DNA of 64,000 nt from Styela clava (lineage: Eukaryota): assembly GCF_964204865.1 (NCBI RefSeq), contig NC_135259.1, forward strand, positions 8,990,001 to 9,054,000, written 5' to 3'. Of the stretch, positions 504 to 47,444 are shown one piece after another. Each line of letters opens with the position of its first letter. The stretch's first letter is position 1. The notes below the pieces were generated by a model that was given only the letters and a program-made list of their open reading frames with translations, did no database searches and was not told where the DNA came from. The translations under genes and the position numbers were made by a program.

Positions 504-588
504 GTTACATCATCGTCACCGCAGAAACATTTTACTATCTCACGATTGAGTTACGCTCTCGTTCTCTCGTTTGTCACGGGGAATCACC
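504..588 (+). promoter_or_regulatory. Putative bZIP / TTCTCTCGTT / NF-kB module upstream of gene 1
   Basis: GTTACATCA 504-512, TTCTCTCGTT 562-571, GGGGAATCACC 578-588; the same order recurs at other paralogues. Confidence 0.5.
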
Positions 589-861
589 TTTACGGTAAAG
601 CCGTATTTATTTATTCGTCAAATTATCGCTGCTTCAAAATCAATATATCTATTCTACATTGCTAACCAAATAGTGCGATTGGACTGAAAACCCCACTTTA
701 GATTATGTATTATCCGCTAAACTAAATATATGAACGACAAGACAGAATGTTCATCAAAGCAGTTAAACGAGATATTGTACGTAGAAAGGTATCAGACTAC
801 AAGTTTATAATATCGAGATTACTACTCATATTTTTGAAGAAAAAAAGTTTATCAAACCGCT

Positions 862-2662
862 ATGGCAAGCTTGGAGCTTTACATCAAGGTAATCTAAGGA
901 AATAATATAAGACCATAAGAAACATGAATTACGTGCATTATAGTAATTGACGGTTTCATACGGGAATGATCGTATTCTAAAGAATTACTTTTTGTAAACT
1001 TACCTATATTTGTGACCGATATTCATCCGTAGGCTCAATATGACGACGGAACAATAAGCTTATAACAGACTTTAGTAAATGGCCAGATGATATATTATGT
1101 AAATTTTCGTATAATATGGTTCTATTGATAGATGATATATTTTTGTGTCCCATCATATTTTTAAGTAATGAGTATATGTAGGTTTAAATATAAAAGTCTA
1201 ACGAGGTTTTTGTTTTTTTAGATTGTTGCATTATGCTCCGTCTGTCTTATCAGCGTATCTTCATTTGACCCTGAGTAAGTGTTTAGTTATGTTCGCCAAT
1301 TTTTCGTAATATATTTATCGGCGTTTTAAGATAGATTGAATTATTAAACTAATATCTAGTATTAATGTATTAATTAAATGTCATACATTGCATAATTTAG
1401 GGTAAAATTAATTCTGACTAGTGCGGTGCTAAAGAATTTAAAAAAAATTATTTATTTTGTTAAAAAATAACATTCATACAGAATTTTGGAATGGTATATA
1501 TGTCTATTTATTCGTATAAATAATACTCTTCATTAAAATCGTACGGTTCTTTAACAAATATTATCTTTTTCCTATAGCTCAGAGTTTATAAGAACTCACA
1601 ACTGCAAAGTCAATAAAACAGAAACAGTAGATGATGGATTTGCTTCTTATTACTTGCATGAGTGAGTACCGAATACATATTTCAACTTTCTAAGACAGTG
1701 TAAAAATGAGTCTGAATTTCCTACGTGCTTTGATTTATTTATCTGTTTTATTACAAAGCTAGTGATATTCTTATTCCGGCTGAGTAATACCACTCGGCAT
1801 TAATATAATTTTAGCTAGACACAGATTCCACATGTTTGTCGCAAAGAGCAATACTTTTTTATATTTTGCTTGGAGAATAAACTAGCTAATTTATACTTCC
1901 CTCCCTTTATAAAACCTTGCAAAATTTTACGATTCATTCATCTACGATATCCGTATTTTCAGGGTTAATTGTATAAACTTAGAGCCAAGTTCTTTCCCAA
2001 GCGCCATATGTTCATCCACAAGATGTCGCGAACCTATAAATGGAAAACCCTTGTCTGGCAAAAGATACGAACCAAAAGAAGTATTGTTTAAACTACACTT
2101 TGACAGTCGTCTAAATGGCAAATTCACAAAATCACTAACAGTTGCATGCAGGTATGTTTTTTATTTCATATTTTATTGCAATATTTAAATTACCCAATAT
2201 ACTAAAAATGCTAACTAGCATAAGAAATTGGTGTAATATTTAACCTCTCAATAAAACAAAAGTTGGGCAGCTATATATTGATAAACACAAGATTGAAAAG
2301 TAAACTATAATATGTTTTTCAACAAAGATCATTCTGAAAATGATTTTGTTTTGTTTTTTCTATTTTCAGTCAACTATCAAAAGTTAATTTAGATTTCAAA
2401 AGAGTATCTTATATTAAAGGTGTATGATTCCTCTTCGCCTTATTAATTAGAAATAGATCATACAATACTTCTTATGGCATCATAAATAATGAAATTTCAA
2501 ACAATAAAAGTGAACCAACATTTAATATTTTACTTTAGATGTGTCAAAGTCGAAAAATTGACTAAACGGCGAAAAGGAGGACGGGGCCGAAAGGGAGGAA
2601 AAGGCAAAGACAAGAAATCTCGTCGAGGAAAAAAAGCGAGAAAAGCTCACACAGACTCATAG
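862..2662 (+). CDS. IL-17-like secreted cystine-knot protein, cluster gene 1 (5 exons, 158 aa, polybasic C-terminal tail)
   Basis: Exons 862-888, 1222-1274, 1578-1661, 1963-2151, 2539-2662; all GT-AG and in frame. Protein: MASLELYIKIVALCSVCLISVSS-FDPDSEFIRTHNCKVNKTETVDDGFASYYLHEVNCINLEPSSFPSAICSSTRCREPINGKPLSGKRYEPKEVLFKLHFDSRLNGKFTKSLTVACRCVKVEKLTKRRKGGRGRKGGKGKDKKSRRGKKARKAHTDS. Signal peptide, C-x4-C and terminal VACRCV resemble IL-17 EAxC..C and VGCTCV. Confidence 0.85.
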
Positions 2663-3365
2663 TGCTTCATTGCCGAACTATTCAGACGTGATTGAAATTG
2701 AAAATGTTTTGTTATCTATTATTTATATATTATTTATCTATTTTTTCATGATTTCGTTTAAGGTAAAAATATTTAAAGCTGACTTTTGTTTTCACTATAT
2801 TCATACATATATATGAAATGCAATATTTTTTTGGGGAATCCAAGTTTGCTTCAGTGTTAAATCGTATAAAATATTTTCAAAAGTAATTATATTTATTATA
2901 TTTTCATGTATTTATTTATCAATTCTATTTATTATTTCCACTGAAAATTGTTCCTTCTTTTAAATATTTTTATAATTTTAATCGACCAAATTTATAGTTT
3001 TCTATTAGCTATTATTTCAACTGGTTTTATCGAAGTCATGGTGCTAAACTTTACATAATTTAATATATTTGTTATATTTGTGCTTCTAATAATTTTAAAT
3101 GAATTACTTTCTGCATAACATGGGCATCTATGATATAGTTGTAGATATGAAAAAGTTGAGTGGATAAGTTAATAACCGTTTTTTGAGGGATTTTGCTTAT
3201 GAGTGAAGTGTGAGTGCGAGTGGAATATTTACCTACGGCGGTAAGAACGATTACATTATCGTCACCACGATAATACTTATTATCTCATGCTTGAGCTGCG
3301 CTCTCGTTATATTGTTCTCTCACCTGTCACGGAGAATAACCTCATGCTTATTACAGACTTTAGTG

Positions 3366-3772
3366 CAGGAGTCGGAAACCTTTTGTCGCTCGCGTGCCAA
3401 AATTAAGGGGTGCGAGTCATTGACGGGCCGCACATATTTTTAGAAAGTTGAAAACCGAACGGATGATACGTTTTATAATAAAAATGAAGCAGTGATACAT
3501 CTCTCGAATAGAATATTGATTTATTTTCTCAATGCATCTCAAAAAATTGCATAGCATCTCAAAAAATTTCATTTGAATATTTTCGGCGCCATTGTACCCT
3601 TTGTATTTAGCATCACCTCTTCTGCGTTTAGTTGCCATTAATTAAACGAGTTCAATAAACGAGGAATTATGAATTTTAATATAATTCAGGGTACACGTGT
3701 CTCACAATAAATTCTGTTACGTATCATTCTGTTGGTCAAAACAGCTGTTGTGCTACTATAATTCAGTGAAGT
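3366..3772 (+). mobile_element. hAT/Charlie-type MITE, truncated copy
   Basis: Starts CAGGAGTCGGAAA; the interior (GGGCCGCACATATTTTTAGAAAGTT...GTCAAAACAGCTGTT...TATAATTCAGTGAAG) matches the complete copy at 51200-51613; the right TIR is absent. Confidence 0.7.
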
Positions 3773-4819
3773 GAATGAATTAATATTTTATAAATGGAAT
3801 TCGTTAGATTGCTGATTTATTGTAGTATGTTTTTATGTGACTCCTGTTTTAAACAAAAGGTTGTACGTATACGACGAATCTTACATGCTAATGTCTTTCG
3901 TGTTTATGTTCTATCCGCTAGGGGGTACACGAGAGGCAATTTATAATTGTTGATAAAATGACATTACATTTTCTCACCGTTCTCTGGCCCTCTATTTGAT
4001 AACTTTCAAATTGGAACGTCTATGTACCATTAATGGTTTTAAATGAATATGGTGGGTGTATTCATTCACTTTTGAATTTGATGCAATGTATTTTTGAATT
4101 TTAAAGTGAGATTGAGATAAATTCACGTTATAAGCAGTAAAAATAGACAGAAAATGGTTCAAATCCACGATAACAAAAGCTACTTTAAAATTTTTTATAG
4201 ACCAAAGTAAAATGAGCCGTCAATTAATGGTATGACGTAAAATTAGATTTTTTTTTCATAAAACCGGCGTTTGTAGTGTATATGTGTATAATATATATAA
4301 TATCTCCGTATTAATGTGATAACAAAAATTTGTTCGTAGTTTTCCAAATGCATTTGAGTGGCTTCGTGATACTTGGCGTCACATCAATTCAAGATATTTA
4401 AATTGTCCAGCGCAATACTCATAAATGAGAGAAAAAAGATGAATAATTGGCTTCCAACATTTCCCACACTCTACAGGGGGGGTTTTCGACGACGGAGTTC
4501 CGCAGTTACATTTCAGGATTAAGTTTACATTATTAAGTATAATTTTTCACGGGTATAGCAAATGTTATTAAACTTGTATCATTGTGTTTTGACAGTTTCA
4601 CATTATTAGAGAATGATTGTATAAATGTGTAATATATATTTATTTATATTTTATACAAATTTATATAGCCCTGCAGCCTTACAAGTATACTGTAGATAGG
4701 TGTGTAAAATAACGTATTGTAAACTATTGTATTGGGGTTCCCCAAACCTCCAGAATATTCCATAGAAGTTCCACTCCGTCTAAAAGGTTGAAAATGACCC
4801 GTTTATTGATTACATTCAA

Positions 4820-5346
4820 CATCGTTTCCCAAACCTATTTTCCCGGAACACCTACGCTTTTATCTCGCCACGCGGAACACCAAAAAATAAGAAGGTAATA
4901 TTGATAATGAAAGAATTGTGTAATGGATTTACCTTGTGCTCAACTTGCACAACTGGCTTATCGCGACATCTTTTGAGGTTTTCAGCTTTATTCAAACAAT
5001 TCATTGAAAAGGGTGCTCTCCAAAAATTTAGTCTATTGTAAAATAAAAAAGTTTACTTCAACCTTACCAATTGAAAAACTAGGCCGATAGTTAACGATAT
5101 TCAACGGTTCACAAAAATACCATGCTTTGCATACTGGCACGAGACCTGTTTACCTGCTTAGATAGCAAGGCCTGTCTGCCTTTATTCGCCAGTTGAAAGA
5201 CAAATTTACGACCCAGAGGCGTCGAAGTACGACCAAGATCGCCATGGCGGCCAATTTAATTGCAATTTCGATTACTGTTCCGCGGAACACTCCAAAGTAG
5301 CTCGCAAAACAGTAGTGTTCCGGGGAACACATTTTGAGAAACGCTG
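4820..5346. mobile_element. hAT-like MITE
   Basis: Imperfect TIRs CATCGTTTCCCAAA / TTTGAGAAACGCTG with subterminal GGAACAC repeats at both ends; no convincing TSD. Confidence 0.55.
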
Positions 5347-6087
5347 GACTACAGCTTTCCACAATGAGACTTATTCTCAGCACAATAAAACACCAGGATC
5401 GAGTATTTATTAATGTAAATCATTTTTTTGCATACGGGGGACTGGTCATGAATAAGCGAAATCATTGACACTGGTTTTGAAAAATGAACTTTAAGAACAG
5501 AATATTCGTTAATTGGCGTGGATTATGTTTTTATTCATAAATACAATATTGTCCAATGCTTTATTTTAATCCTAAATACTCCACGTGATCTGACGTTGGT
5601 ACAAGTTTTTTCACAGGTCAACAAGTTTGTCAGTGGTAAAGTACGTTCCATATTCAAATATTTCGTCATATACAATAGCAAATTAGAAATGATGTTATTT
5701 TCAAATTTGGAAATAGTTGTCGCTTAATAACGTTCGATTTCATCAGAGTCGGTCTATTTGGTTTCTCACTTAGATTTTGGAATGTTGTGGCTATCGTAAA
5801 AGGGCTTTACCCCATCGGTAACTTTTCATATTTCGAAATATTTCGTGGGCGTGACTGTATTGTTTGCGAAGACCAATCAAATGGTAGTTATCAAGAATAT
5901 TCCCAGCTATGTAGAATCATATAATCATTTTTGACATTCATTGCATGATATATTTGTGATCTGTACCCAATAAAGCTTACCGATTTTAAAATATTAGTTG
6001 AACTGTAGCACAGCGGTAAAGAAAGTAAACTTTGTGTATCTCACGTGGGATATTAGCGCGGAATACTTACCGACATCGTTAAAAATG

Positions 6088-6179
6088 GTTACATCATCGT
6101 CACCACAAAAACACTTATTATCTCACGCTTGAGTTACGCTGTCGTTATATCGTTCTCTCGTCTGTCGTGGGGAATAACC
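6088..6179 (+). promoter_or_regulatory. Putative bZIP / TTCTCTCGT / NF-kB module upstream of gene 2
   Basis: GTTACATCA 6088-6096, TTCTCTCGT 6153-6161, GGGGAATAACC 6169-6179. Confidence 0.5.
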
Positions 6180-6446
6180 TTCACGGAAAAGCCGTATTTG
6201 TTCGTCAAATTATCGCCGCTTTAAATCGATAACTATACTATACTGCTAACCAAAAAGTGAGATTCGGCTGAAACCCCCTATTTAGATTATGTATTATCCG
6301 CTAAACTAGATATATAAACGACAAGACAGAATGTTCATCAAAGCAGTTAAACGAGATATCGTACATAGAAAGGTATCAGACTACGAGTTTATAATATCGA
6401 GAATTCTACTCACTATTTATAACATAGAAAAGCATATTCAACCGCA

Positions 6447-8145
6447 ATGTCAAGCTTAAAGCTTTACGTCAAGGTAAGCCGTAGAAATAATATCATACCA
6501 TAAGAAACATGAATTATGTGCATTAGTGATTGACGGTTTTATATGGGACTGATCGTATTCTAATAAAATAACTGTTCGTAAATGTACATGTAGCCTATTT
6601 GTGACCGATATTGATCTGTAGGCTGAATATGACGACGGAGTAGTATGATTATAACAGGCTCTAGTACATGTCCAGATGATATAATATGTAATTTTTTAAG
6701 AGAAGATGGTACTAAATATTTTGTAAAATATGGTTGTATTGATAATGATATATATTCATGTGCCATCATATTTTTGAATAATAAGTACATGTGAGTGCTA
6801 ATATAAAATTTTAACGTGGGTTTTATTTTTAGATTGCTGCATTATGCTCCATCTATCTTATCAGCGTATCTTCATTTGACCCTGAGTAAGTGTTTAGTTA
6901 TGTTCACTAATTTTTCGTATTATCGGCGTTTTAAAATAGATTAAATAAATATCCAGTATTAAAGTATTAATGAAACGGCATATTTTGTAGATATTGGCAA
7001 ATAATTCAAATGCTCTTCAACAATATCGTATGGCTTATTAACAAATTCTATTTTTTTATAGTTCAGAGTTTATAAGAGCTCACAGTTGCGAAGTTGTCGA
7101 ATCAGAAAAAGTAGATGATGGATTTGCTTCCTATTACGTGCATGGGTGAGTACCCAGTGCATATTTCAAATTTACAAGAGGGGGTTAAAATGAGCCTGAA
7201 TTTTCCTCGTGTTTGATTTATGTATCTGGTTTATTATAAAGCTAGTGATTCCTTATTCCGGTTGAGTAACAACACTCGGCATATTAATATACTTTTAGAT
7301 GGACACAGTGTCAACAGGTTTGTCACAAAGGGCAATACATATTTAGTTTTTGCTTCAAAAAAAGGACAGCCCTTATGCAAATAAATGTATTCCTCCCTAC
7401 CATTAAAAAACTCAATATAATTTTACAATTTATTCATTTACGGTATTCGTATTTTCAGGATTGAATGTAAAAACTTATCGCCAAGTTTCTTCCGCAACGC
7501 AACATGTTCATCCACAAGATGTCGCGAACCTATAAAAGGAAAACATTTGTCTGACAAAAGATACGAACCAGAAGAAGTATTGTATATTCAAAACTTTGAC
7601 AGTCGACTCAGTGGAAAACTTTCACAATCACTAACAGTTGCATGCAGGTATGTTCCCTTTTTATATCATATTTTTAAATCACTAAAATACCAAAAGTATT
7701 AACTAAAATCAGACGATTGATGTAATATTCAACGTCTCAATAAAAGTTGAGCAACTATATATCGACAAACACAATATTGAAAAGTAAACCATAATATTTG
7801 TTCAACAAAGATCATTCCGAATAAGACTTTGTTAATTTTATTTTTTCCAGTCAACTATTAAAAATTGATTAAACATTTGAAGGTATGCTAAATAAAACAT
7901 GCATGATAATTCCTCCTTGAGTGCTTAACTTACACATAGAGAATACAATACCATTTGTAGTATTATATGCAATGAAATTTCAAACTAGAAAAGTAATCCG
8001 GAATTTAATTTTTTTTATCTTCAGATGTGTCAAAGTCGAAAAATTGACTAGACGGCGAAAAGGAAGAAAGGGCCGAAAACGAGGAAAAGGCAAAGACAAG
8101 AAATCTCGTCGAGGAAAAAAAGAAAGAAAAGCTCACAGAGAATAA
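6447..8145 (+). CDS. IL-17-like secreted cystine-knot protein, cluster gene 2 (recent duplicate of gene 1, polybasic tail)
   Basis: Exons 6447-6473, 6833-6885, 7062-7145, 7459-7647, 8025-8145. Protein: MSSLKLYVKIAALCSIYLISVSS-FDPDSEFIRAHSCEVVESEKVDDGFASYYVHGIECKNLSPSFFRNATCSSTRCREPIKGKHLSDKRYEPEEVLYIQNFDSRLSGKLSQSLTVACRCVKVEKLTRRRKGRKGRKRGKGKDKKSRRGKKERKAHRE. Confidence 0.85.
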
Positions 8146-10435
8146 TAATGCTCTATTGCCAAATTGTTCAGACGATGTTGAATTTGAAATTGTTTAGTTA
8201 CTTATTATCTGTTAATATATTTTTGTATTATTTATCTATTTTTTCATGCCTAATTCAAAAGTTAAAATTATTTGAAACTGACATTTTGTTTCTATTGTAT
8301 TCATACATATATATATGGAATACAATATTATTTTGCGGAATCCAAGTTTGCGTCAGTGTTGAATCATATAAAATATTTAAAAAACTTATTTATTATATTT
8401 TCGTATATTTATTATTTATCTATTTATTATTTCCACTGACAATTGTTCACGTTTTTAAATATTTTTATATTGTTGAGCGACCAAAATTTTATTGGCTATT
8501 ATTTCAACTAATTTTATTGAATTCATGGTACAAAAATTTATATGTTCGGAATATTTGCTATTTTGGTGCTGCCACTCATTTTGAATAAATTATTTTTTGC
8601 ATAACAAAAGATCGGCTTTATCAAAGTGAACTATGATATAGGCTCAGATAAGAAGGCCGAGTTTATAAACATGTCTTTGAGGGCTTTGGTTTTTGAGTGA
8701 ATCAATTGTTTTGTTTAAATGCATTGATTCTAAAACATGATACATTATAATATTGTATGCAAGTATGTATTCTCACAGAAACTATACAGACCTAAGGGAG
8801 AGAGAGAGAGAGCCGAAGTAAATTGTGTATAAAACTTAATCCAAATTTAATATTTATACAGTCTTGTTATAACAAATTTACGTTATATTCACTTAAATTA
8901 ATCGTAAAATTTCATCTAATATATAAATAAAAATAAAGTATTACATATTTATAAATCGTTTAAATGCTTCAAACAAAGCTCAAATATAAATGACGAAATG
9001 CCGTCAAATTTAATTATGACTATTTAATTGATTGGCTGTTTTGATCAGGTTTTGCTTCAAGTAATTCAATGTCGTCATTTCAATTCTTGTCATTGGGTTG
9101 CGATTGCAGATTAAAATGAAGTTAAATTACAATTCTAAAAATATATAGAGACAAGTAAAATTACAGGTGGTTCGTATTGAGTATTAGAATGGCGACCCCT
9201 ACTTAGATGTTGATTTGAAAATATTGTCTAAATATCAATAAATTTTACCTTGTAGTTGGATTAACCCCAACGTTTAAAGTCGATGATTCTTGCCTAATTT
9301 TCCCAGGTCAGAATTGCGCTCGAGGCTGTGCATTTACATTATTTGGCAATCGATAGTTTTAGAAGGTATTTAAATAAATTAGCACCAATTTTAAGCAAAT
9401 GAGTACAAAATCATTATTATGTAGGCATTTGGAGTTTTGTTAATTCAAAAAATATATTAGGAAAAAAAAAGTATTTTAGTTTCAGCAAATAAATTTCTTC
9501 AAAAGTAAACGTATATTTGCGCAAAATTTAGGCAAGTATACTTACTATTTTAAGAGTATTATTTCTGATACTAATTCCATCGCATTACTCTAAAAATAGA
9601 ACCTAATGCCTGCGCATAGGGATATTAAGAATATTATTTCAAGACCTTAGTATATAACAATGTCATACCAATAACTGAACTTTGTCTATATCATTTTGCA
9701 CATAATCTGGTTTTATTTTTTACATTCGAATTCCATCAAATATATATACTATATACGCACTGTTTAGTTATTTAAAACGCAGTATTCTTCTTGACGTCAT
9801 ATACCAAAAAATAGTTAATTTGAAAAACATTGTCGTGAGATAATCTTTTATTTGCGCGAGGAATTACTACGACAACAAATTTGTCACGTATTGGAAATGT
9901 ACTAGTACAGAAGTGTAAACTTTTGTGAAATACCGGTCTGTATATACCTATCAATTTGAAATAGTTTATAGAAACATCTATGTTTAGATACTTTTATAAA
10001 TTGTTGACTAATAATTTTACCCTGGCGGAACAATACCTAGGGTATTGTAATAAAAAACCTTTCAAATATTACTTGGGCATTGTAATATGGAAGCACCAGT
10101 GTGACAATAAAATGGAATTTACGTCTACATCTTTGAAAACATATGCTATAGCTAATTAATCAAATCGTCTTTATGGTGATCATGGACCTGAGAGACAATA
10201 TGTTTCACAAATTCGTGCACAATTTCTAACGGTAATGTTCTATTCCTAGAAGAATAACGAAAGGCGGAAATTGGCTGGCATGCACAGACAGTCTTGATTA
10301 CGTATTCGGCATATTCTCTGAAATTGAAATGTGTGCAGTTAATAATAATATATTATATTGGTATGATATCAATGAGTGCGTCAAGATCGTTACGTGAAAA
10401 ATCGTGACAGTGAAATTCGAGAGAATATTACTCCT

Positions 10436-10484
10436 ATTACGTAAATATTCTCTCGTTCTTACACACGTGTTAAAGGAAAGCCCC
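10436..10484 (+). promoter_or_regulatory. Putative bZIP / TTCTCTCGTT / NF-kB module upstream of gene 3
   Basis: ATTACGTAA 10436-10444, TTCTCTCGTT 10448-10457, GGAAAGCCCC 10475-10484 (reverse complement GGGGCTTTCC matches GGGRNWYYCC). Confidence 0.55.
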
Positions 10485-10735
10485 AATATTGTCGACTGCT
10501 GTGACTGCAACATTCGAAATAAAATAGCGCCCTAAAATAGACCGGAAAAGAATCAGAGTTCCAGTATTAAAGCCAGATTTTTTTTTAAAAATATTCCTAG
10601 ATACGAAAAAAAAGGAAAGTAATTTCGCAATGTATCGATCAAAGCTTTATAAAGCTCGCATGTCGGTCGAATTATCATTAAAATCATTAAACAGATGAAA
10701 CTAACAAAACAAGAAAAAGCGAGAAGAAATAATTT

Positions 10736-11929
10736 ATGAATTCCTGCACTAATAACATGGTAATGGATTTTTTTTTTAAATCGGCATACAGTATGTGATT
10801 AAAGTTATATTAATGTTGTATATTTTTGTTCTCACAGACAACTTCTGCGACTTTATTGGCTTTTCTTACTATGTTTGCATGGAGTACGACAATGGCCCTT
10901 TCAGGGTAAGTAGATCGAATTTGTGTGGTTATTTCGTAACGTGGGTGAAGCATTATAAATGCATATTTAGTTTAGTCGGCTCACAAGTCAAGCTCGTTAT
11001 GTATCCAAGGTACAATCTGTATTGTTTGTTACCCGGACGTGTATTATCAAGTCGCCCGTAATTTCTCTGCGCTATATATTAGCACTATATCATCTAACTA
11101 AATCATACCATCATATTTAAACCTAATTCAAATTTGATAGAATTTTTTTTTGAAAAAATACAATTGCTGTATGAATATAATTCAAAAGTATTACCTAACG
11201 TTCTATAATATTTCAATTCCAGGGCGGAATTTTCAAAAAATCATCGTTGTCAAGAATTTCTGGATGTTGAACTAAATGATAGATATGCACCGCATACCAT
11301 GAGATGGTAAGAAATAACTGAGATTGATTTGTGCCTGCTCTTGATAGAAATATTATATTAAAAATTATTAATTCATCGAACATTTTTCCGCAGTTTGTAT
11401 AATTTGAAGTTGATTGTTGAGGTAAAATATCAATTTTATCTCAACTCCAACATATCATCATTCATGGGAAAAATAATAATGTGCTTATACCGTATATACA
11501 CTAACATGATCCTTGTGATTTTGTAAAGGTTCGAATGTACGAACATGGTTCCCTCAACATACTCAAATACGACTTGTCCACTAAGATGTAGAGATCCTGA
11601 AACAAATCAGTTTCTACCTCTTTCAAGTTTCCGACAGCTGCCTGTATTTGCATGTGAAAGTTTTGAGGTCAGGAGAAATGGAAAAATTTTCAAAGAATCT
11701 GTTGCAATTGTAAAAGGGTGCAGGTGAATTAGTTTTTACTCAACATTTTTTTGGTTGAAGTATTTTAACATTGTAAAAAGTAAATAGGGATTTCTTAAAA
11801 AACAAGTCCACTACATTTCAATTAACACTACAGGATAAGCTATCAATTTTAATTTATTATTTTTTCATTTTATCTAGTTGTGTGGAAGCTGCAACTGCAA
11901 CTAGTAATACATATAGCGTCATGTGTTGA
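10736..11929 (+). CDS. IL-17-like secreted cystine-knot protein, cluster gene 3 (extra internal Cys and C-terminal Cys)
   Basis: Exons 10736-10759, 10838-10905, 11223-11306, 11529-11723, 11878-11929; TATAAA at 10648. Protein: MNSCTNNMTTSATLLAFLTMFAWSTTMALSGAEFSKNHRCQEFLDVELNDRYAPHTMRWFECTNMVPSTYSNTTCPLRCRDPETNQFLPLSSFRQLPVFACESFEVRRNGKIFKESVAIVKGCSCVEAATATSNTYSVMC. Confidence 0.85.
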
Positions 11930-30928: not shown

Positions 30929-30996
30929 TTCTTTTAGTCATTGAAAACACTGTGTTACTTATCCTAACTTGCATGTATTTACAATAACTGTATATA

Positions 30997-36098: not shown

Positions 36099-36304
36099 TT
36101 CTATATATCATCCGCGATATTTTGAGCGTATGGAGTGATTGTCTAATCTTCATGTAAATAAATAATGTGGTAGCAGATGGTGCTTATTTATATTCTTGCT
36201 GGGATTGGTGGAAAAAACCGCGATGAAAACTACTTCCAAACTATGGTAATATTCTTTCAAGTATACAGGGACGCCCCCGTTCTACGCATATCAGCACGTG
36301 CACT

Positions 36305-36347
36305 TTCGAGAGAAAGAGCAAACGAGAGTTTCCCTGAATGATGTCAT
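36305..36347 (-). promoter_or_regulatory. Putative module upstream of gene 8
   Basis: TTCGAGAGAA 36305-36314, AACGAGAGTTTCCC 36321-36334, TGATGTCAT 36339-36347. Confidence 0.45.
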
Positions 36348-39300: not shown

Positions 39301-39522
39301 GCTTCAACGTAGCAGATTTTTCCTAATTATAATGAGACAGAAGCATTAACAAAGCCTGCTTCATGGTCTCAGCCTATGTACGACACCTCTCTATCAACTG
39401 GCGAAGTGCAGCCCAGCAATTCGCAGGAATATGAAAAATAGGTATGATTTTATTTGAAATGATAAAAACGATAAAATAACATTTCCCAAACTTTTGAATA
39501 TATAATTACAATGAAATTTATT

Positions 39523-41673
39523 CTAAGAAGTTCTAGCAGGCCAACGCCTTGAGTAATGCTTCTCCCGCCATCTGAGAACACATCTAAATCATAAAAAGAA
39601 AGCCATATGAGATGATAATTTTATAATATAATACTAAAGTTGTATTAATTTCAAGCATACATGTGAAATTACCTGCATCCTCTAATCAACCTTTTCGTCA
39701 TAACGAATATTTTTGAGTTTCTTCTTGCTTCGAAGCTATAAATAGCTTCAATAGGCTGAATTCGGTATTTTCTTAAAGAAAGAAATGATTGTGTTCGTGG
39801 GTTTTGACATCGGGTCATGCAGGTGGCATGCATAAAAACACTCGGAAATAAATTATCGCATTCAATCCTAAAAAAATATCGTAAGAAACGATTAAATGAA
39901 CATGTTTGAATACTATGTAAAATATTTTGTCTGTCCAAAGCAGAGTTTCCCAAGCTGGAGTCTTCGGACACCTGTAGCTTTGCGACAGTTGCGATATGAT
40001 AAGAGTCTGAATGATCTTCAATGATTGATTTCATAAAAAAGCCATTGCATCTTTTTAGTTGAGGGTTGCGGAAAAATATCACCGGCTATTAGAAAAGGAA
40101 ATTAATTTTTTTTGCCTTTTGCAACGACCTACATGTGTAAGGCAGCATTTTCAGCTCTTACCAATTTGATGACAAAATACTGGACGAGACTTGATGTAGA
40201 GTCGGAGTTTGCTTGTCACAAATTGCGCCAGGAATTGATAAATTGTGCAGTGAAAAGCAAGCGTATCCGTCACATAAATGCCGTTTGCATTGTTTTGTTG
40301 TGAATGAAACATTATCCTTCCTCGTCGGTCAGGCACAAGAATTAATACGACATATAATGGGGAACCGCCATAGATAAGATTCACAAACAGGGGTCCGCGC
40401 CTAGAAAGTTTGGGAAACCCTGGTCTAAAGAATGTCCGTTTGTTTACTTACATAAATACACGAAAAATACATAGAAAATGTATCTTTATGAAACTATATA
40501 CTGGAATGCGACTGATTGGCTCTGAAATTGATATGATAACCATATACTCACCATTTTAAGTTAAATGGAGCGAGACCATTATTTATCATTTCGTTGCTAA
40601 TGATTCTGCAGTTGAACTGTTTTGCGAATTCTGACCTAAATAAATAAAATACTGAAATTGAAAGATAAAAAAAAATATCATGCAGATAATCAACAATAGC
40701 AAGTAGTGATAAACGAACTCTGACAATCTCAGATACTCACTCAGGATCGTAAGCATTCGCATTTGACTTCAGATGGTTAAACGTCATATACAAAATCAAT
40801 ACCAAAACCTGGTAATAAAAAAATGTTTAAATATTACAAATTGTTGATCATATTACCACTGGTTTCTTAACTATTTGGGATATTTTAGAATGTACTCTCA
40901 GTTCATGAATTTCCTTCCAATACCTACTTTTATCTACAAATCAATATAGAATGCTGATAGTTCGTCAACAAACATTTGATGAAATTTAACTCCCATATTA
41001 GTTGCACAAAGCACGAAAGAGTTGCTTCATAAACAAATAGTAAAACCTCTTGCTCATCTGTATCAGCATGATATTACACTTATTGTTACAAAGTTTATAA
41101 AGTAAATTTAGTAGAACGATTACACCAGTGTTTTTAAGTACAAATATACATAATATTATAGTATGTAATTAAGCACTTTGCAATAGTATTGGGTCCAACT
41201 CTGTTGGCCTCGAATACTATAAATTCTAGATTACATGTCCATGACATCAGTCGGAATGCACTACAACAGATAGGCGTGTGCATAATATCTGCAAAAATGT
41301 CGGCGCTTCAGAAGTATGTGTACCAATATGGAGGTAACTAATTTTGTTCGCCTACTTTAGATCAAGTTATGTAGAGGGACTGAAGCCTATGGGCGGGGGC
41401 TATATTCCCTTGGCTTACACAGACATGTCCCAAACTCGTGATAGAACTAAAATAAAGAAAATCGGAATAAAATTATGGCCTAACCCTAAACTGGTACACA
41501 TACTACGGGTGTGCCAAAATGCCATTGTACACCCCATTACTATATTTCTTATTGTTTGGTTCCTCGACAGGCAATTGATTTAGCTTTTCAATTAATAATA
41601 ACCTAATTTGATGCATTTTGTCTAAACAAATCTACAATCCTTAGAGTATTACCTTATGTTCCCCGCATGCCAT
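39523..41673 (-). CDS. IL-17-like secreted cystine-knot protein, cluster gene 9 (minus strand)
   Basis: Exons 41673-41653 (least certain), 40808-40741, 40635-40552, 39867-39673, 39583-39523. Protein: MACGEHKVLVLILYMTFNHLKSNANA-YDPESEFAKQFNCRIISNEMINNGLAPFNLKWIECDNLFPSVFMHATCMTRCQNPRTQSFLSLRKYRIQPIEAIYSFEARRNSKIFVMTKRLIRGCRCVLRWREKHYSRRWPARTS. Confidence 0.83.
39941..40422 (+). mobile_element. Internally deleted hAT (Charlie/Buster) transposon in intron 3 of gene 9
   Basis: TIRs CAGAGTTTCCCAA / TTGGGAAACCCTG; 8-bp TSD GTCCAAAG / GTCTAAAG. The internal remnant 40112-40210 reads LPFATTYMCKAAFSAL..TKY..RLDVE, the hAT C-terminal dimerization motif. Confidence 0.88.
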
Positions 41674-43520
41674 CAAAAGCGTATATGTCTAAAACTGCTA
41701 CACTTCCAAATATGAAATTCATTAATCAGAAACGTTCTGTAACCAAATCACATGTACTACAACAGAATCATTTTGATTCATTATGTTTCATGAAACTGTC
41801 GGTTCTTTCCAACCTAAAAATATTATTATTTGGTTGAAACTGAAATATTTTTCGAGGGACCCTCAGGTTATGGAAACCATATAATGAGTTTGTGAACTAG
41901 GCATACCTCATTCTGAGGAATTACTAGAATGGTTCAACCTACGCGGCTAGGCTGTCTGTTTTCCAATCTTCTAATATGTTAAATGTAGACAAGTAGGTTG
42001 ATGCCGCCGGCGCGCAAAATTCTATGTTGTAAGACTTAATGGTGAAGACATGACGCCCTAATCAAAACATTGCTTTTCTCCCACAACAAATATCCCAATG
42101 CTGGTAAATACTATTCAAATATGTAATTCTTACCCATGAAGCATAAAGCTTTCGCCAATTACTCAAATAAGAAATTACACCAAACACATTACTTCGAAGA
42201 GAGAAGAGATTGATGGGAAAATAGTAATAACAGGTTACAGTAATTGCTAATTTCTTAGGGCACACGATACTAAATCTCAAACACTCAACATGAAAAGCGT
42301 AAAGGACTTGAAATGTAAATTTTAAATTGCGTTGGTATGTAGACTAAAAAGTCACAATAAATATATATACAAGATTTGAAAATAATAATAGGTAAAAGCA
42401 ATCGACCACAACTTAAAAATTGCGGATATAAGAAAGACGTTATAGTTGTGGTATCCCTTCTAGATTGAACTTGATAATTGATTATAAATAAACTTTTAGG
42501 TCGATTACAAGTTTAATATACAATTATTGGTTTGGTTATATTCAACGAGAAGTTCGAGAATAATTTAAAAACAATTTTTCTCTACCTTAGTTTTTTCTTT
42601 TTTAATTTCTATTTGGACCAAAGCAAAAAGCAAGCTAGACAAACGCCACTATAATAGATGTCCTTTACCAATCCTTCTGAAAATGTTCAACATCAGATAT
42701 TTGACTGTCGAAATTCAATACTTGGAAACTACGGAGGGTGATGGCAATTGATCTTATGCGTAGTAATATTAGAACGTAGCCACCCTTATGAACACACACA
42801 CAAAAAACAATTGCTTTTACTTTGTGCACTCAGGATGAAGCACCATGAAGAGTAGCAATTTGAAATGGGTGTCTGTTGGTGACATTGTAGGTTTCAGATT
42901 TTGCGTTCGAGTGCCGGTGATACCCATTATCTATAATACGGTGTAAAATATTACAATGACTGTGCATACGCGAATCTTGATTTACTTGGAATAGTTTGAT
43001 TTTCCAACATAAATTCTCAAACGCACAAAAAAGACACAACTTGGGAAACTTTCAAAATAATAGATCTCTGATGTTGAGCGAAATAATTTTTTCTTTTTCT
43101 TAGTGACATCAAACAATCAAATTCACGACAATTATATTCAATATCCACCACAAGACATGGTTATTTCTTCGATAATTTTGAAACTGTGGAAGTAAAGTTA
43201 TTTCTACTTGAATTTAGATTAGATATTTAGTACACTGAACAGAGTCAATTTGTATTATAAAATTTATTAAATTTTGAAAAATCCTTTACTTCCCGACTGA
43301 ATACAAAATTGAATTCTAATCCACCGAGCGCATTTTTGTGAATGGTATATTCGTAAAACGTCTATTTGGTTTAAGTGAGCGAAAAAATCTCAAGTTGACT
43401 CGGAGGTTAAATTGTGGTTGTGACTTACGGGTCAAAGCTTATCAAACTAATATACTGTTCTGGTTACACACATTGACGTTACGATTGATACCGCGCTACC
43501 TTAGATCAGCTGTTGAGCGA

Positions 43521-43581
43521 TTTCGTCATCAATTCTCTCGAAATATATCGCTCGTAATTCAATCGATTGCGGGGAATCACC
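43521..43581 (+). promoter_or_regulatory. Putative module between the divergent genes 9 and 10
   Basis: TTTCGTCA 43521-43528, TTCTCTCGAA 43533-43542, GGGGAATCACC 43571-43581 (identical to the gene 1 site). Confidence 0.45.
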
Positions 43582-46500
43582 TGGTAGAGTTCTATTTCAT
43601 TCAAACAGATATAGACCTCACAGGTGTTACTTTTCCGTGGTTCAAGCTTGTCAAGTTATAATTTATTTGAAATGACTTTTCGAATTTATTTAACACTAAA
43701 TGGCAGACTATCAATTATCTCTTATGCTAAATTTCGCAACACGTAATCCACGTGATATTGGATTCAATCGTGCGACGTATTTTATTTGTTAATGCACCAC
43801 CCAGACAAATATAGTTTATTTCGTCACGAAAAAACAATAAAAATATGTCGAATGTGATTAAATTAAAATATCGTTTTACAATTGGGAGGATATATTTAAC
43901 AAAAGAGAAGAATATTACAAATCTGATGCAAACTTCAATTCATTCTCTCCGAGATATATATATATATAATAAGGTTTTTTTTATTTTAAATTTTTTTAGA
44001 TGTTCTACAATGTTAGCTCAGTAAATGGAAATATCATTATGTACATTTTTGAAAATCGGCTAGTTAAAATACCATGTGATAATATACCCGTGGTTTTATA
44101 CATTTTATATAAAAATTTGAAACGAGTTTCAGTATCTCCAATAAAAAGCTTTCCTATCAACTCTGCCAGATCTGCCTTTATTATAACAAATTTTCGGTTT
44201 TGAAAGGAAATAACTGGCATATTGTAATGAATCGACAAAATAATTTTAAAAAGATCGGATATTCTAACAGCGCTACACGCAAGAAGGTTTGGGAGATATT
44301 GACGAGCGAAGAAACAAGCATATATGTGACCAGAATTAATAGTTCAATTTATGATTACTTTGAGAACGAACTGAACAATCAACCAGAAGTGTATCGACGG
44401 CTATTCACGGTTAGCTGTAAGGATATCACACTGTCTTATTTGCCCAGTGTAACTATGACCCAGTTTCAACCCTGTAACGTTTAGTTATTGTCTGTTTGCG
44501 TTCTCTTCACGCAAGAGGAAATAACCAAACGTCGAACACGCACGCGGTTATTGTTCAAATAGCTCTCGCATCGATGGTTCACAATGTGGGGTAAATAGAT
44601 TACGATAACAAAGTACACGCCTACCATTGGAAATTCCGCCCATCGCAAAATCTTCAATAGGTGCAGCGCATAAAAAATTTTACATTTCGAAGTGGGACTT
44701 AATTTGCTTTATTATTTTTGGGTATGCATCGAAGTGATATATTTATATTTGTACACCCACACATAAGAGTTTGTTTGTATTGATTCTTTAATACACGTGG
44801 GACTAAATTAGGAAAGTTAATGTTTCATACAAGGGTAATTCTTATATATTCGGATAATCCATTTCAAACTGAATACCCATTTTTAAGCTGGCATACTCAG
44901 ACCCTTTAAGTGTAATTTTGAACCGAACATATAACTGCACCCTCAAACCCGGCACATAACGACTTCAATATTTGAATTGCTAATAACAAAACGATACATA
45001 TGTACATTTCGTGTCAAAATTAGCTTTTTGCTGTGGTCCAATATTCAAAGACAAGGTCCCGTCCAAGCAACTCATGACTTTTCCTCTTGCGCTACTTACT
45101 ATACATGTCAAAATTAACGTGTTCAATTTAGAAAAATTTAATTCTTTTTGCGGGATGGACAGAATACTTTACCACAAGGGAAATATTTATCAGCAACAGT
45201 TTTTTATTTATAATACCAAGATCAAACATAATAAAATAACACGAAACAGTCACATTTTTGCTAGATAATTCAAATTTAGAAAGTTATTTAATTTTTTTTT
45301 CATAATAAAACTGCCCCAAGCAAGAATATATGACAATATATTGTTCTATAGTGTCTTTAAACAGAGAACCATATTTCAGACAAGGGTATTGTATTCAATT
45401 TCTGATCAGATATTAACGATTGTTACACTCCACACTTAATGGTAATCGTTATGTTGATTCAATATTGAATTACAAAATATTTTTATGGCTACGTATATCA
45501 CTCATAATGTAAATATACCTATAAATAATTATCATTTCAGCGCATCACGTGGCTTGAAATCCCGCCGGTAGATATATCTACATTCTACTTTTTAATCACG
45601 GTACTTTTGTATTTGCTTTACCGGACGTACGCAACATATTGAATGGAGTAGTTTTTTTGAGTATAATATGGAGTTCTGCGTTCATGATTTACAACTGATC
45701 ACACCTAACACATTGCTTTAGTGTTAGAGGAAGCCAAAGAATGCCATTTATGGATGTGATATGATTACATTTAATACACTATCATAATTTTCCCGGCATC
45801 GGAACTTATGATGTAATTTTTTGACGAATATTGAGATAATATTAGTGAGTTTGCAATATTTATGCAAATAAAATGTGAAAATATTATCATTTTTATGGTC
45901 TTTGGTTTAAATATGTTGAGAAATTGTATGTATAATGAAGAATGTTTAACATGGAAGGGGAACGAAATTAGTTTTATAGGTCAGAAAAATATGCAATATA
46001 ACGTGTGCGAAGAATGAAATTTGGATTTAATATGAACGTACACATGTAGTCTTTTTATTCATATTACAAAAAAATATAATAAGCTGACATGCAATTGGGA
46101 AAAGTTATTTACTTAAACCAAATATTGTAATTTATAGAAACTGTACCGATCATATATGATTTTAATTTCACGTAAAGATTTTTTGCCAATTATGAAACAT
46201 TTGCACAGCGTTGAAGAACGTACGCTACAAAAATAAATCAGCTAATTGTGAAAGTCTGTTTGTCAGATGTATGGACGCTGCGAGTTGCAGATGGGTAATA
46301 TCCCGATAAAAAAAGTGAGCGCAATCATTGGCGATAGTTTCATGTTTCATCAGCAACTATATGGTACATAAAGGTGTAGATAAATTTAGAAACCGACATA
46401 GTCAACAGCCCGATCACGGTGAAATGTGACGTGAACCCGTGTGGTTAATCAAGACAGACATGTCCCAATTTGAGATAAAATATTTTTCCACGTGTTGTCG

Positions 46501-47164
46501 GGAGTAACGCTGAACGCCTCCATCACTTGACATATTTGTTGGTGAGTGACGTCATCAACGCCCACTAGTACACCATTCTGCATTATTTTTGAAATTTTTT
46601 TTTTTTTTATTTATTACCAAAACATTTGAGAAAGTTTGTAGCCAATCACATGTAGAAGCAATGTTAAATAGATGGAATTTCCTATATTGTGTACTCTCAA
46701 GATATGTTGATCTAAAAGTAGTAAAACTAGGATATGAATGTATATATCAAAAATTATAGGACTGGCGGAACCTTTATGTTTGTGAATTTATCAAGTATGA
46801 ATACGTTAATTGAATTGCGTAAAATATCTGAAATACTCCTATCCATCCTATTTAAAAATCATTATAAACAATATTTAATAAACTAATGCGCATAATAATT
46901 GTATTTTGATGTGACTGCGATACATTCAAAGTAGACTTGGCCAAAATTCGCATTAACGTAGTAAATTTGATTAGTATTCGTCAGCCATCACGACAATGAA
47001 ACGAATAATTTCTGATTAGTATCACATAGTACGAGATATCACTTGGTCCACGTTAAAAAGATCATATTCAAAGTTTTTCACAGTGCGCCCATGCACGACG
47101 AAGAACACATTGTATTATTTATCTCATGTCGCGATATAAAATGACGATTGACTCTAGGAATACA

Positions 47165-47444
47165 AACGAGAGAACTACACACAAACCTCTCGCGTTACGC
47201 AAAGCTACGTCGTCTCAAAGCCGTGCGTGTTTCCTTTTTTTGCAAACTGAAATTCCCAATCTTGAGAACATAGTTAGCTCACTTTATTTCCAACGTGAAC
47301 AACTGCGACGGGGCCTCGGCCCGCGGCGGAGGAGGCGTGGGTGTGGGTTTTGGAAAGCAAAGAAGGGAATCCCCGTCAGGGATCTGGCTGATATTTAATT
47401 CACAATATGAACATGTTTCTTACAGCATTCCAGAGGGTATAAAA
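47165..47444 (+). promoter_or_regulatory. Gene 10 promoter: AACGAGAGAA, C/EBP site, consensus NF-kB site, TATA box
   Basis: AACGAGAGAA 47165-47174, TTACGCAA 47195-47202, GGGAATCCCC 47365-47374, TATAAAA 47438-47444. Confidence 0.6.

What the first reader, a model, noticed from the sequence alone, without database searches (positions are those of the whole stretch)
504..47374. Shared orientation-independent enhancer grammar: bZIP site + TTCTCTCGTT motif + NF-kB site near nine paralogues
Seen: even where flanking DNA no longer aligns, the same motif set recurs at 504-588, 6088-6179, 10436-10484, 17134-17197 (inv), 20645-20735 (inv), 28042-28134 (inv), 36305-36347, 43521-43581 and 47165-47374. 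It comprises a TTACATCA / TTGCATCA / TTACGTAA / TTGCGTAA-type site, one or two copies of TTCTCTCG(TT), and a GGGGAATnnCC-type site, in the same order at most sites (genes 8 and 10 deviate). Distance to the ATG is ~0.2-1.9 kb. Gene 4 has ATTACGTAA next to GGAAAGTACC (14212-14233) but I found no middle motif there. Established: C/EBP and NF-kB are the main transcriptional outputs of IL-17R/Act1 and TLR signalling. Inference: the cluster is co-induced, possibly with feed-forward autoregulation. I cannot assign AACGAGAGAA to any known factor.
Basis: partly seen in the sequence, partly recalled or inferred. Interest (0 to 1): 0.8.

Follow-up and report, generated by a model that had tools for sequence, protein, structure and literature searches.

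The report
Shared promoter module of sea-squirt cytokine genes
A cluster of sea-squirt genes for IL-17-like immune signalling proteins shares a short set of three DNA control words just upstream of the genes, which probably switches them on together, although nobody has yet tested this.

Summary
The motif set is real and not chance. The window is Styela clava chromosome piece C13:8,990,001-9,054,000 and holds ten five-exon genes with an IL-17 fold that public annotation calls 'uncharacterized'.

- **Motif enrichment.** TTCTCTCGTT occurs 8 times against 0.09 in shuffles, and about 0.45 expected from genome density.
- **Ordered trio.** bZIP word, then TTCTCTCG, then a kappaB-like word, stands at 5 genes (4 independent lineages of 9 motif loci). 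Random placement never gave 3 or more in 200,000 trials. Looser versions stand at 4 more genes; gene 4 has only the outer two words.
- **Position.** Most modules lie about 60-260 bp upstream of TATA boxes, so they are proximal promoters. Three strong copies are inverted and 0.7-1.7 kb upstream.
- **Not a transposon.** 9 of the 30 genome-wide TTCTCTCG-to-GGGGAA composites lie in this one cluster. The neighbouring subfamily and the 82 kb of canonical IL-17 clusters read lack the module.
- **bZIP word.** It fits the ATF4/C/EBP composite TGATGxAA better than a plain C/EBP site.
- **Middle word.** It is unassigned. Elsewhere it forms same-strand pairs and also sits in a dispersed repeat.

Co-induction and self-reinforcement are untested; no RNA evidence was found. 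This is a plausible inducible cytokine promoter with one new word.

The parts
505..588 (+). G1 module: TTACATCA 505-512, CTCTCGTT/TTCTCTCGTT 556-571, GGGGAATCACC 578-588; 274-357 bp upstream of ATG 862
3251..3341 (+). Relic copy of the G1/G2 module with no gene behind it: TTACATTA, TTCTCTCA, GGAGAATAACC. Homology stops right after the kappaB word.
6089..6179 (+). G2 module: TTACATCA, TTCTCTCGTC, GGGGAATAACC; TATA at 6311, ATG at 6447
10416..10484 (+). G3 module: inverted TTCTCTCGAA 10416-10425, TTACGTAA 10437-10444, TTCTCTCGTT 10448-10457, canonical kappaB GGGGCTTTCC (minus strand) 10475-10484; ATG at 10736
14086..14261 (+). G4 partial set: M-like TTTCTCGTTTT 14086-14096, TTACGTAA 14213-14220, GGAAAGTACC 14224-14233, GGGAATATT 14253-14261; TATA at 14357, ATG at 14586. 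No exact M.
17120..17196 (-). G5 distal inverted module: two TTCTCTCGTT (17176-17185, 17156-17165), GGGGAAATTAAC 17131-17142, GAGAATTCC 17120-17128; the claimed bZIP word TTGTAACA 17189-17196 is doubtful. It lies 1.1 kb upstream of ATG 18283.
17910..18126 (+). G5 proximal weak set: TTACATCA 17910-17917, GGGAAATTGCC (minus strand) 18077-18087, TATA at 18120
20645..20734 (-). G6 distal inverted module: TTGCATCA 20727-20734, TTCTCTCGTT 20705-20714, GGGGGAATGT 20662-20671, GGACTTTCC 20645-20653. It lies 1.6-1.7 kb upstream of ATG 22348.
28042..28133 (-). G7 distal inverted module: TTACATCA 28126-28133, two TTCTCTCGTT (28102-28111, 28081-28090), GGTGGGAAC 28060-28068, GGGGAATTACC 28042-28052. It lies 0.7-0.8 kb upstream of ATG 28824.
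28574..28738 (+). G7 proximal weak set: TGATGTAA 28574-28581, TTTCTCACG 28591-28599, GGGGTTTTTC 28708-28717, TATA at 28732
36307..36346 (-). G8 module (gene on the minus strand): TGACATCA 36339-36346, GGGAAAC 36328-36334, CTCTCGTT 36321-36328, TTCTCTCG 36307-36314; TATA at 36192, ATG at 36098
43524..43581 (+). Orphan module between G9 and G10: CGTCATCA, TTCTCTCGAA, GGGGAATCACC. It is 2.7 kb from the annotated ATG of G9 (40787, minus strand) and inverted to it; it points forward towards G10, 4 kb away.
47165..47444 (+). G10 loose set: inverted TTCTCTCGTT 47165-47174, TTACGCAA 47195-47202, GGGAATTTC (minus strand) 47249-47257, canonical kappaB GGGAATCCCC 47365-47374, TATA at 47438; ATG at 47570
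862..49174 (.). Ten five-exon IL-17-fold genes. Coding spans by tblastn: G1 862-2656, G2 6447-8142, G3 10736-11926, G4 14586-15681, G5 18283 to about 19523, G6 22348-23507 or beyond, G7 28824-30925, G8 36098-34577 (minus), G9 40787-39526 (minus), G10 47570-49174.

Best explanation
The motif set is a compact composite promoter module. It was inherited from the ancestor of one Styela clava subfamily of IL-17-fold cytokine genes and kept while the rest of the promoters diverged beyond alignment.

In its commonest form it lies about 60-260 bp upstream of a TATA box. Read towards the gene, it holds three parts:
- a bZIP site of the ATF4/C/EBP composite or PAR type (TGATGyAA, TTACGTAA);
- one or two copies of TTCTCTCG(TT), whose factor is unknown;
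- a Rel/NF-kappaB-like site (GGGGAATnACC, GGGGCTTTCC, GGGAATCCCC).

Spacing between the words varies: 8 to 36 bp from M to kappaB, and 3 to 56 bp from bZIP to M. The likely mode is therefore loose cooperative recruitment of three factors, not a rigid complex.

The inferred outcome is that the genes are silent at rest and switched on together by immune or stress signals that activate Rel and bZIP factors. Three strong inverted copies 0.7-1.7 kb upstream (G5, G6, G7) are either distal enhancers made by local inversion or duplication, or relic promoters.

Shown: presence, order, enrichment, restriction to this subfamily, and position relative to TATA and ATG. Inferred: factor identities, binding, inducibility and selection.
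For: Enrichment:
- Each word is enriched in the window.
- Genome-wide, TTCTCTCGTT has 2665 hits in 376.8 Mb. That predicts 0.45 per 64 kb, against 8 seen.
- The composite TTCTCTCG-N(6-36)-GGGGAA has 30 hits genome-wide against 8 for the reversed control, and 9 of the 30 lie within C13:8,960,562-9,033,576.

Order and co-occurrence:
- An ordered trio stands at 4 of 9 lineage-collapsed M loci. With random placement of the bZIP and kappaB words, 2 or more occurred in 0.018% of 200,000 trials and 3 or more never.
- Over 214 kb there are 25 M loci. Of the 16 inside the subfamily, 14 have a bZIP word, a kappaB word or both within 90 bp. Of the 9 outside, none does.
- Only the G1 and G2 flanks align, so the other recurrences are not residual alignment.

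Independent discovery: an unbiased word count puts TCTCGTT and GGGGAAT at the top.

Promoter context: TATAWAW lies within 300 bp of the ATG in 7 of 9 genes checked; G1 has TATATGA and G3 TATAAAG.

Relic copies: the six promoter copies cut off from their gene carry TCG to TCA in M and GGGG to GGAG in the kappaB word in 6 of 6. The seven gene-linked copies keep GGGGAAT in 7 of 7. This is one ancestral event, so it is anecdotal.

Pathway parts: Rel-homology exons lie at 4 or more loci and SEFIR at 4 or more.

Gene identity: the genes have an IL-17 fold.
Against: - There is no expression, accessibility or binding evidence of any kind. No RNA run held 17000-23000, and four runs guessed to be RNA showed no contig on G10 or the orphan module.
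- Between G1 and G2 the module is no better conserved (0.70-0.85 identity) than its surroundings (0.77 overall). The TATA/start region is the real peak, at 0.95-0.98.
- The bZIP and kappaB patterns were chosen after looking at the sites, which inflates the statistics.
- Four of nine places fit only loosely.
- The module is absent from the sister subfamily at 9.06-9.14 Mb and from the 82 kb of canonical IL-17 clusters read. It is a family heirloom and not a general IL-17 code.
- Most kappaB-like words miss the classical consensus by one position.
Confidence: 0.6

Rival explanations
1. Neutral leftover: the words are fragments of the ancestral promoter that survive by chance and slow decay, with no present function.
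For: - The module is private to one subfamily.
- G1 against G2 shows no extra conservation of the module.
- There is no RNA evidence.
- Several sites are degenerate.
Against: - Promoters other than G1/G2 no longer align at all, and exon-4 protein identity is only 28-53% between most pairs. Yet three 8-11 bp words keep their order in four lineages.
- The relic copies without a gene are the ones with hits in M and kappaB.
Confidence: 0.2
2. Transposon cargo: the trio is carried by a mobile element that landed near the genes again and again.
For: - The 12-mer TTCTCTCGTTTT has 1251 genome hits against 146 for the control.
- 28 of 40 sampled hits belong to one dispersed repeat and 3 to a second.
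- The orientation flips would suit insertion.
Against: - Six copies of those repeats find nothing in the 214 kb around the cluster; the best E is 0.06, on a T-rich stretch.
- The flanks of the modules share nothing but the words.
- The M-to-kappaB composite is nearly confined to this cluster.
Confidence: 0.03
3. Over-reading: flexible motif definitions in AT-rich DNA produce an apparent grammar by chance.
For: - The loose bZIP pattern TKRCRTMA hits 88 times in 64 kb.
- The strict bZIP-to-M pattern is not enriched genome-wide, 29 against 21.
- G5, G8, G9 and G10 need relaxed readings.
Against: Shuffle and placement controls, genome density and the unbiased word ranking.
Confidence: 0.05
4. The inverted distal copies at G5, G6 and G7 and the orphan at 43524-43581 are dead promoters of lost or inverted gene copies, not working enhancers. 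The real control of those genes lies in their weak proximal sets.
For: - Each of G5, G6 and G7 also has bZIP-like and kappaB-like words next to its TATA.
- The array demonstrably makes relic promoter copies.
- No transcript lies near the orphan.
Against: - No relic exon lies behind any inverted copy: there is no minus-strand family hit near them at E up to 0.01, and no exon-like frame in the 700-800 bp behind them.
- The inverted copies are the best-kept trios of all, with doubled M.
Confidence: 0.3

Closest known systems
Mammalian inducible cytokine and IL-17-target promoters that combine NF-kappaB and C/EBP sites (IL-6, lipocalin-2 type)
   Same: A Rel-type site and a bZIP site lie within about 100 bp of each other, just upstream of a TATA box of an immune gene. 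IL-17 signalling activates NF-kappaB and C/EBP, and many IL-17 signature genes hold C/EBP sites in their proximal promoters (passages of PMC4552893).
   Different: - Here the genes are the cytokines themselves, not their targets.
- The bZIP word is mostly TGATGyAA.
- A third, unassigned word sits between the two.
- Nothing has been tested in the animal.
- The IL-6/IL-8 promoter layout is recalled from memory, not taken from a call.
[quoted passage not shown]
   Same: TGATGTAA at G1, G2, G7 and proximal G5, and TGATGCAA at G6, fit TGATGxAA. The G6 word with its flank, GTTGCATCA, is letter for letter the CARS element quoted in PMC5175342 (passages).
   Different: - CAREs are known from amino-acid and stress response genes, not cytokine genes.
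- G3 and G4 have the palindrome TTACGTAA and G10 has TTACGCAA, which fit PAR or C/EBP sites better (recalled).
- Binding is untested.
Homotypic clusters of transcription-factor sites
   Same: TTCTCTCG forms same-strand pairs 4-34 bp apart: 81 times genome-wide against 9 for the reversed control. Within the cluster it is doubled at G5, G7 and G8.
   Different: - Part of the 81 are repeat copies. About a dozen are TTCTCTCGAATAATTTCTCTCG, and there are several duplicated loci.
- The reversed control lacks the CpG.
- No factor is known. A full-text search for the word found only primers and unrelated sequence.

Membership tests
NF-kappaB/Rel binding site | Match to the consensus GGGRNWYYCC (consensus recalled from memory) | tested here: inconclusive
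   Exact matches occur at only 3 sites in the window: 10475 at G3, 47365 at G10, and 4734, which is 1.7 kb upstream of G2. GGGGAATCACC, GGGGAATAACC and GGGGAATTACC read as 11-mers with one off-consensus base.
NF-kappaB/Rel binding site | A Rel-homology protein is encoded in the genome | tested here: met
   PF00554 exons above the cut-off at C6:8.98 Mb, C9:18.30 Mb and C8:16.81 and 16.83 Mb.
NF-kappaB/Rel binding site | Bound by a Rel protein and needed for induction | not testable with these tools
   No binding or reporter data are available.
C/EBP-ATF composite element (CARE) | Sequence TGATGxAAx (PMC5175342 passage) | tested here: met
   Met at five places: G1, G2, G6, G7 and proximal G5. 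TGATGYAA has 21 hits in the window against 9.45 in shuffles. Not met at G3, G4 and G10, which carry TTACGTAA or TTACGCAA. G8 and G9 have TGATGTCA and TGATGACG.
C/EBP-ATF composite element (CARE) | ATF4 occupancy and stress inducibility | not testable with these tools
   No data.
Transposon-borne repeat | Modules share extended flanks with dispersed copies elsewhere | tested here: not met
   Repeat copies that carry the 12-mer give no hit in the 214 kb. Module flanks do not align with one another except G1, G2 and the relic.
Orientation-independent enhancer | The same module works in both orientations and at a distance | tested here: inconclusive
   The sequence shows both orientations: forward at G1, G2, G3 and G8; inverted at G5, G6 and G7 and at the orphan relative to G9. 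All inverted copies are distal, and function is untested.
IL-17 cytokine family (the genes served by the module) | Pfam IL17 (PF06083) above its gathering score of 24 bits | tested here: not met
   Best score is 17.7 bits, E 0.0047, on XP_039262204. Exon pieces reach 13.2 bits at best.
IL-17 cytokine family (the genes served by the module) | IL-17 cystine-knot fold | tested here: met
   - AlphaFold model of XP_039262204 from an 18-row alignment: mean pLDDT 86.2.
- All listed Foldseek PDB hits are IL-17A, IL-17F or IL-25: best E 3.9e-3, TM by target up to 0.74, rmsd 1.4-2.0 over about 80 residues.
- In the profile search of PDB sequences, 24 of 27 rows are IL-17A/F, best E 0.022.

The most novel reading that the evidence does not exclude
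TTCTCTCG(TTTT) is the binding word of an as yet unassigned tunicate transcription factor with a regulon of its own; it forms homotypic pairs at dozens of unrelated loci. In this one cytokine subfamily it has been wedged between a Rel site and an ATF4/C/EBP-type site. The result is a three-input switch that works in either orientation and lets a lineage-specific battery of IL-17-like cytokines fire together, possibly reinforcing itself through IL-17 receptor signalling.
Probability: 0.3. Interest if true: 0.65.

Novelty: new variant of a known kind. Interest (0 to 1): 0.45.

Why it matters
Almost nothing is known about how invertebrate chordates control their greatly expanded IL-17 gene families. 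This cluster offers a natural series of promoters with full, doubled, inverted, partial (G4) and decayed (relic) versions of one module.

That series makes a clean test set for the logic of cytokine induction in a close relative of vertebrates. It also gives a handle for finding the factor that reads the middle word.

If the Rel and bZIP sites prove functional, the pairing of NF-kappaB with C/EBP/ATF-type factors at inflammatory genes would be shown to predate vertebrates. If not, the case is a warning about reading paralogue footprints as function.

Tried and rejected
- **Transposon origin.** Rejected.
- **Module as a mark of other immune genes.**
  - The strict M-to-kappaB composite has about 20 hits outside the cluster against 8 for the control. 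None lies near any of the 40 family hits or the 32 Pfam IL17 exons.
  - In the 800-bp pieces around 20 of them I saw only one further full trio: C19:14,873,956, with TTACGTAA, M and GGGGAATCACC. No gene was recognisable in the 6 kb behind it.
- **bZIP-to-M adjacency as a genome-wide grammar.** Not enriched, 29 against 21.
- **Regulon of the paired M word.**
  - ORFs in 20 such loci gave only a plectin repeat (a coding hit, likely chance) and a NEMO-type CC2-LZ exon beside an intronic pair. Those were 2 of the 7 ORFs sent to Pfam, out of 17 ORFs of 95 aa or more. No pattern emerged.
- **G1 against G2 footprinting.** Uninformative.
- **Homology between the flank of G7's inverted copy and G6's proximal promoter.** Only a 60-bp patch, not convincing.
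- **Relic exons behind the inverted copies.** None seen.
- **RNA evidence.** None.
- **Assigning M to a factor.**
  - No motif library (JASPAR, CIS-BP, the Ciona SELEX atlas) is on hand, so TOMTOM could not be run.
  - From memory, M resembles an IRF core with GAGA in place of GAAA (AAnnGAGA). In its three TTCTCTCGAA forms it resembles a STAT site with 4-base spacing. It also contains a GAGAG run. None is convincing.
- **Literature.**
  - No paper on a Styela clava IL-17 cluster or its promoters appeared among the 15 rows listed, of 18 papers holding both 'Styela clava' and 'IL-17' (listing only).
  - Nor in the 12 rows listed for IL-17, Ciona, promoter and NF-kappaB (listing only).
  - The motif strings occur in 227 papers, of which the 20 listed look like primers or unrelated sequence (listing only).
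- **Supplements.** These were closed. Supplementary Table S2 of PMC5175342, the list of CARE sites, was not seen.
- **Joined gene models.** Full-length work (Pfam, profile, fold) used only database proteins returned.

Full report
**What the window is.** The window is G000:C13:8,990,001-9,054,000 of a 376.8-Mb genome with about 31% G+C. Proteins found with a profile of the window's own exons are Styela clava RefSeq entries, all named 'uncharacterized protein', on a contig of 22,500,630 bases, which is the length of C13.

- A six-frame self-comparison shows ten paralogous cystine-knot exons.
- Mapping the database proteins back gives five-exon genes:
  - a tiny first exon (Met plus about nine residues);
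  - a signal-peptide exon ending in FDPE;
  - an exon of the type SEF...GFAPY;
  - the knot exon ending in CR;
  - a last exon starting CV.
Full-length analyses used only proteins returned.

**Are the genes IL-17?**
- By sequence, only weakly. Pfam IL17 reaches 17.7 bits at best, against a cut-off of 24. A family profile hits IL-17A/F chains in 24 of 27 PDB rows, but with E no better than 0.022.
- By fold, yes. The model has mean pLDDT 86.2. Every listed Foldseek hit is IL-17A, IL-17F or IL-25, with TM by target up to 0.74 and rmsd 1.4-2.0 over about 80 residues.
- The family is narrow: 18 representatives among 1.84 billion proteins at E up to 0.001.
- In the genome it fills C13:8.96-9.23 Mb, with a few members elsewhere (40 matches).
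- Pfam-detectable IL-17 genes sit in other clusters on C1, C2, C3, C5, C8, C10 and C19 (32 exon matches).

- TTCTCTCGTT occurs 8 times against 0.09 in shuffles, and TTCTCTCG 13 times against 0.86.
- Genome-wide the 10-mer has 2665 hits, which is 0.45 expected per 64 kb.
- TGATGYAA (21 against 9.45), GGGGAAT (10 against 3.11) and GGGRNWYYCC (3 sites against 0.95 strand-hits) are also enriched.
- An unbiased count of all 7-mers and 8-mers over nine 2-kb upstream regions (G1 dropped as a copy of G2) ranks TCTCGTT first (9 of 9 regions) and GGGGAAT second among 7-mers. CTCTCGTT ranks second among 8-mers. The background was only 120 kb, so words with zero background counts have soft P values.
- Only the G1 and G2 units still align (1-3207 with 5541-8701, about 77%). 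Nothing else around the modules aligns.

**Order and co-occurrence.** I fixed these patterns: bZIP as TGATGYAA, TTACGTAA, TTRCGYAA, TGACGTCA or TGATGTCA; kappaB as GGGGAAT, GGGGAAA or GGGRNWYYCC.

- The ordered trio within 90 bp on either side of M stands at G1, G2, G3, G6 and G7. That is 5 of 10 M loci, or 4 of 9 with G1 dropped.
- Placing the 35 bZIP and 22 kappaB positions at random gave 2 or more trios in 0.018% of 200,000 trials and never 3 or more.
- These patterns were shaped by what the sites look like, so the figure is optimistic.
- Over 214 kb (C13:8,930,001-9,144,000) there are 25 M loci.
  - Of the 16 inside 8.960-9.038 Mb, nine carry both a bZIP word and a kappaB word, five carry one of the two (the first 6-kb unit, G5, G8, the orphan and G10), and two carry neither (a relic copy, and a hit inside G7's knot exon).
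  - The 9 outside carry neither.
- G5, G8, the orphan at 43524-43581 and G10 fit only loosely, and G4 lacks M. Details are in the observation check.

- The composite TTCTCTCG-N(6-36)-GGGGAA has 30 hits against 8 for the reversed control. Nine of the 30 lie in this cluster; five of those nine are near-identical copies of the 6-kb G1 unit.
- The strict bZIP-to-M pattern is not enriched (29 against 21).
- None of the hits outside the cluster lies near another family member or a Pfam IL-17 exon.
- Both sets of neighbours lack the module.
  - The 82 kb of canonical IL-17 clusters on C3 and C5 have 0-0.05 M words per kb, against 0.49 in the window's first 49 kb, and no trio.
  - The sister subfamily at 9.054-9.144 Mb has 0.08 M words per kb. 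Its seven M loci are solitary, with no bZIP or kappaB word within 90 bp.
- The module is therefore private to one subfamily. It is not a mark of immune genes at large and not a general IL-17 code.

**The transposon question.**
- The longer word TTCTCTCGTTTT has 1251 hits against 146 for the control.
- Of 40 hits sampled in order along C1, 28 are copies of one dispersed repeat, 3 of a second, and 9 are unique.
- Six such repeat copies find nothing in the 214 kb (best E 0.06), and the module flanks share nothing with them.
- So the middle word does ride on a common repeat elsewhere, but the cluster's modules are not that repeat.

**The middle word elsewhere.** Same-strand pairs of TTCTCTCG 4-34 bp apart occur 81 times against 9 for the control.

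- About a dozen are one small repeat, and several are duplicated loci.
- About 20 unique loci read TTCTCTCGTTTT...ATTCTCTCGTTTT with unrelated flanks. Some sit just upstream of a TATA box or an ATG.
- This is the habit of a real factor site.
- I could not name the factor. No motif library is on hand, and the literature search for the strings gave only primers.

**Anatomy relative to the genes.**
- TATAWAW lies 92-237 bp upstream of the ATG in 7 of 9 genes checked; G1 and G3 have near-matches.
- At G1, G2, G3, G4, G8 and G10 the set ends 64-164 bp upstream of the TATA, with the kappaB word nearest the gene. G8 is the exception: there M is nearest.
- These are proximal promoters.
- The best-kept trios (G5, G6, G7, with doubled M in two) are inverted and lie 0.7-1.7 kb upstream. 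Each of these genes also keeps a weak forward set by its TATA.
- No exon relic lies behind the inverted copies.

**Evidence on selection.**
- G1 against G2 shows no special conservation of the module.
- The 6-kb tandem array holds six relic promoter copies whose homology stops just after the kappaB word. All six share a hit in M (TCG to TCA) and one in the kappaB word (GGGG to GGAG). The seven gene-linked copies keep GGGGAAT.
- This fits selection, but it is a single ancestral event.

**Factors.**
- Seven of the ten bZIP words begin TGATG. Five fit the C/EBP-ATF composite TGATGxAAx (passages of PMC5175342).
- TTACGTAA and TTACGCAA fit PAR or C/EBP sites (recalled from memory).
- Rel-homology and SEFIR genes are present.
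- That IL-17 signalling activates NF-kappaB and C/EBP, and that IL-17 signature genes hold C/EBP sites in their proximal promoters, is stated in PMC4552893 (passages).
- Feed-forward control is therefore conceivable, but nothing here tests it.

**Expression.** No listed run held 17000-23000 as RNA. Contigs of four runs guessed to be RNA covered only a 35-base low-complexity patch of 43400-49399. That is compatible with genes silent at rest, and equally with no data.

**Verdict.** The finding is a real, statistically robust, lineage-private promoter module of the familiar Rel-plus-bZIP kind, with one unassigned extra word. Its function is inferred, not shown.

Noticed in passing
window 14991-15209: In this assembly G4's knot exon matches the older RefSeq model XP_039260757.1 in two different frames that meet near 15078. 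This is a frame break or an allelic or assembly difference. G4 is also the one gene without the middle motif.
   Followed up: partly
window 40740-40830 (minus strand): The annotated G9 protein (XP_039260756) starts inside the signal-peptide exon. Upstream of its ATG the frame stays open through a hydrophobic stretch back to a CAG acceptor, so a first exon seems to be missing from the model.
   Followed up: partly
G000 genome-wide; samples L066-L105 on C1: A dispersed repeat of more than 100 bp carries TTCTCTCGTTTT; it accounts for 28 of 40 sampled hits. A second small family accounts for 3 of 40. Together they explain most of the 12-mer's 8.6-fold excess.
   Followed up: partly
L055/L056, C19:14,873,9xx (minus strand): This is the only full trio I saw outside the cluster, among the 800-bp pieces around 40 loci (20 M-to-kappaB hits and 20 paired-M loci): TTACGTAA, GTTCTCTCGTTTAC, then GGGGAATCACC, the same kappaB word as at G1 and the orphan. 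No gene was recognisable in the 6 kb behind it.
   Followed up: partly
L033, C14:7,328,917-7,329,019: TTCTCTCG words stand in the intron just before an exon encoding the CC2-LZ/UBAN region of a NEMO/optineurin-like protein (Pfam PF16516, E 8.3e-10).
   Followed up: partly
window 28094-28103 and 20713-20719: A Su(H)/RBPJ-type word, CGTGGGAAAA, lies between the two M copies of G7. A Runx-type word, TGTGGTT, abuts the M of G6. Both consensus words are recalled from memory, and each occurs only once.
   Followed up: no
loci L057-L065 (C3:14.84-14.875 Mb, C5:15.02-15.08 Mb): KappaB-like words (GGGGAAT, GGGGAAA, GGGRNWYYCC) run at 0.27-0.50 per kb in canonical IL-17 clusters and 0.49 in this cluster, against 0.07-0.16 in flanking DNA and the sister subfamily. 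G+C differs a little between the regions, so this is only a hint.
   Followed up: partly
window 351, 6048, 9620, 14320, 18101, 21216, 46296: The 8-mer GGATATTA stands upstream of seven genes (six lineages) and is absent from 120 kb of background. Its position and strand vary widely, from -182 to -1274 relative to the ATG.
   Followed up: partly
window 15271-15404 and 41434-41564; 3358-3771 and 51192-51566: Two pairs of repeated non-coding segments, 72% and 63% identical.
   Followed up: no
I did not look at it.
   Followed up: no
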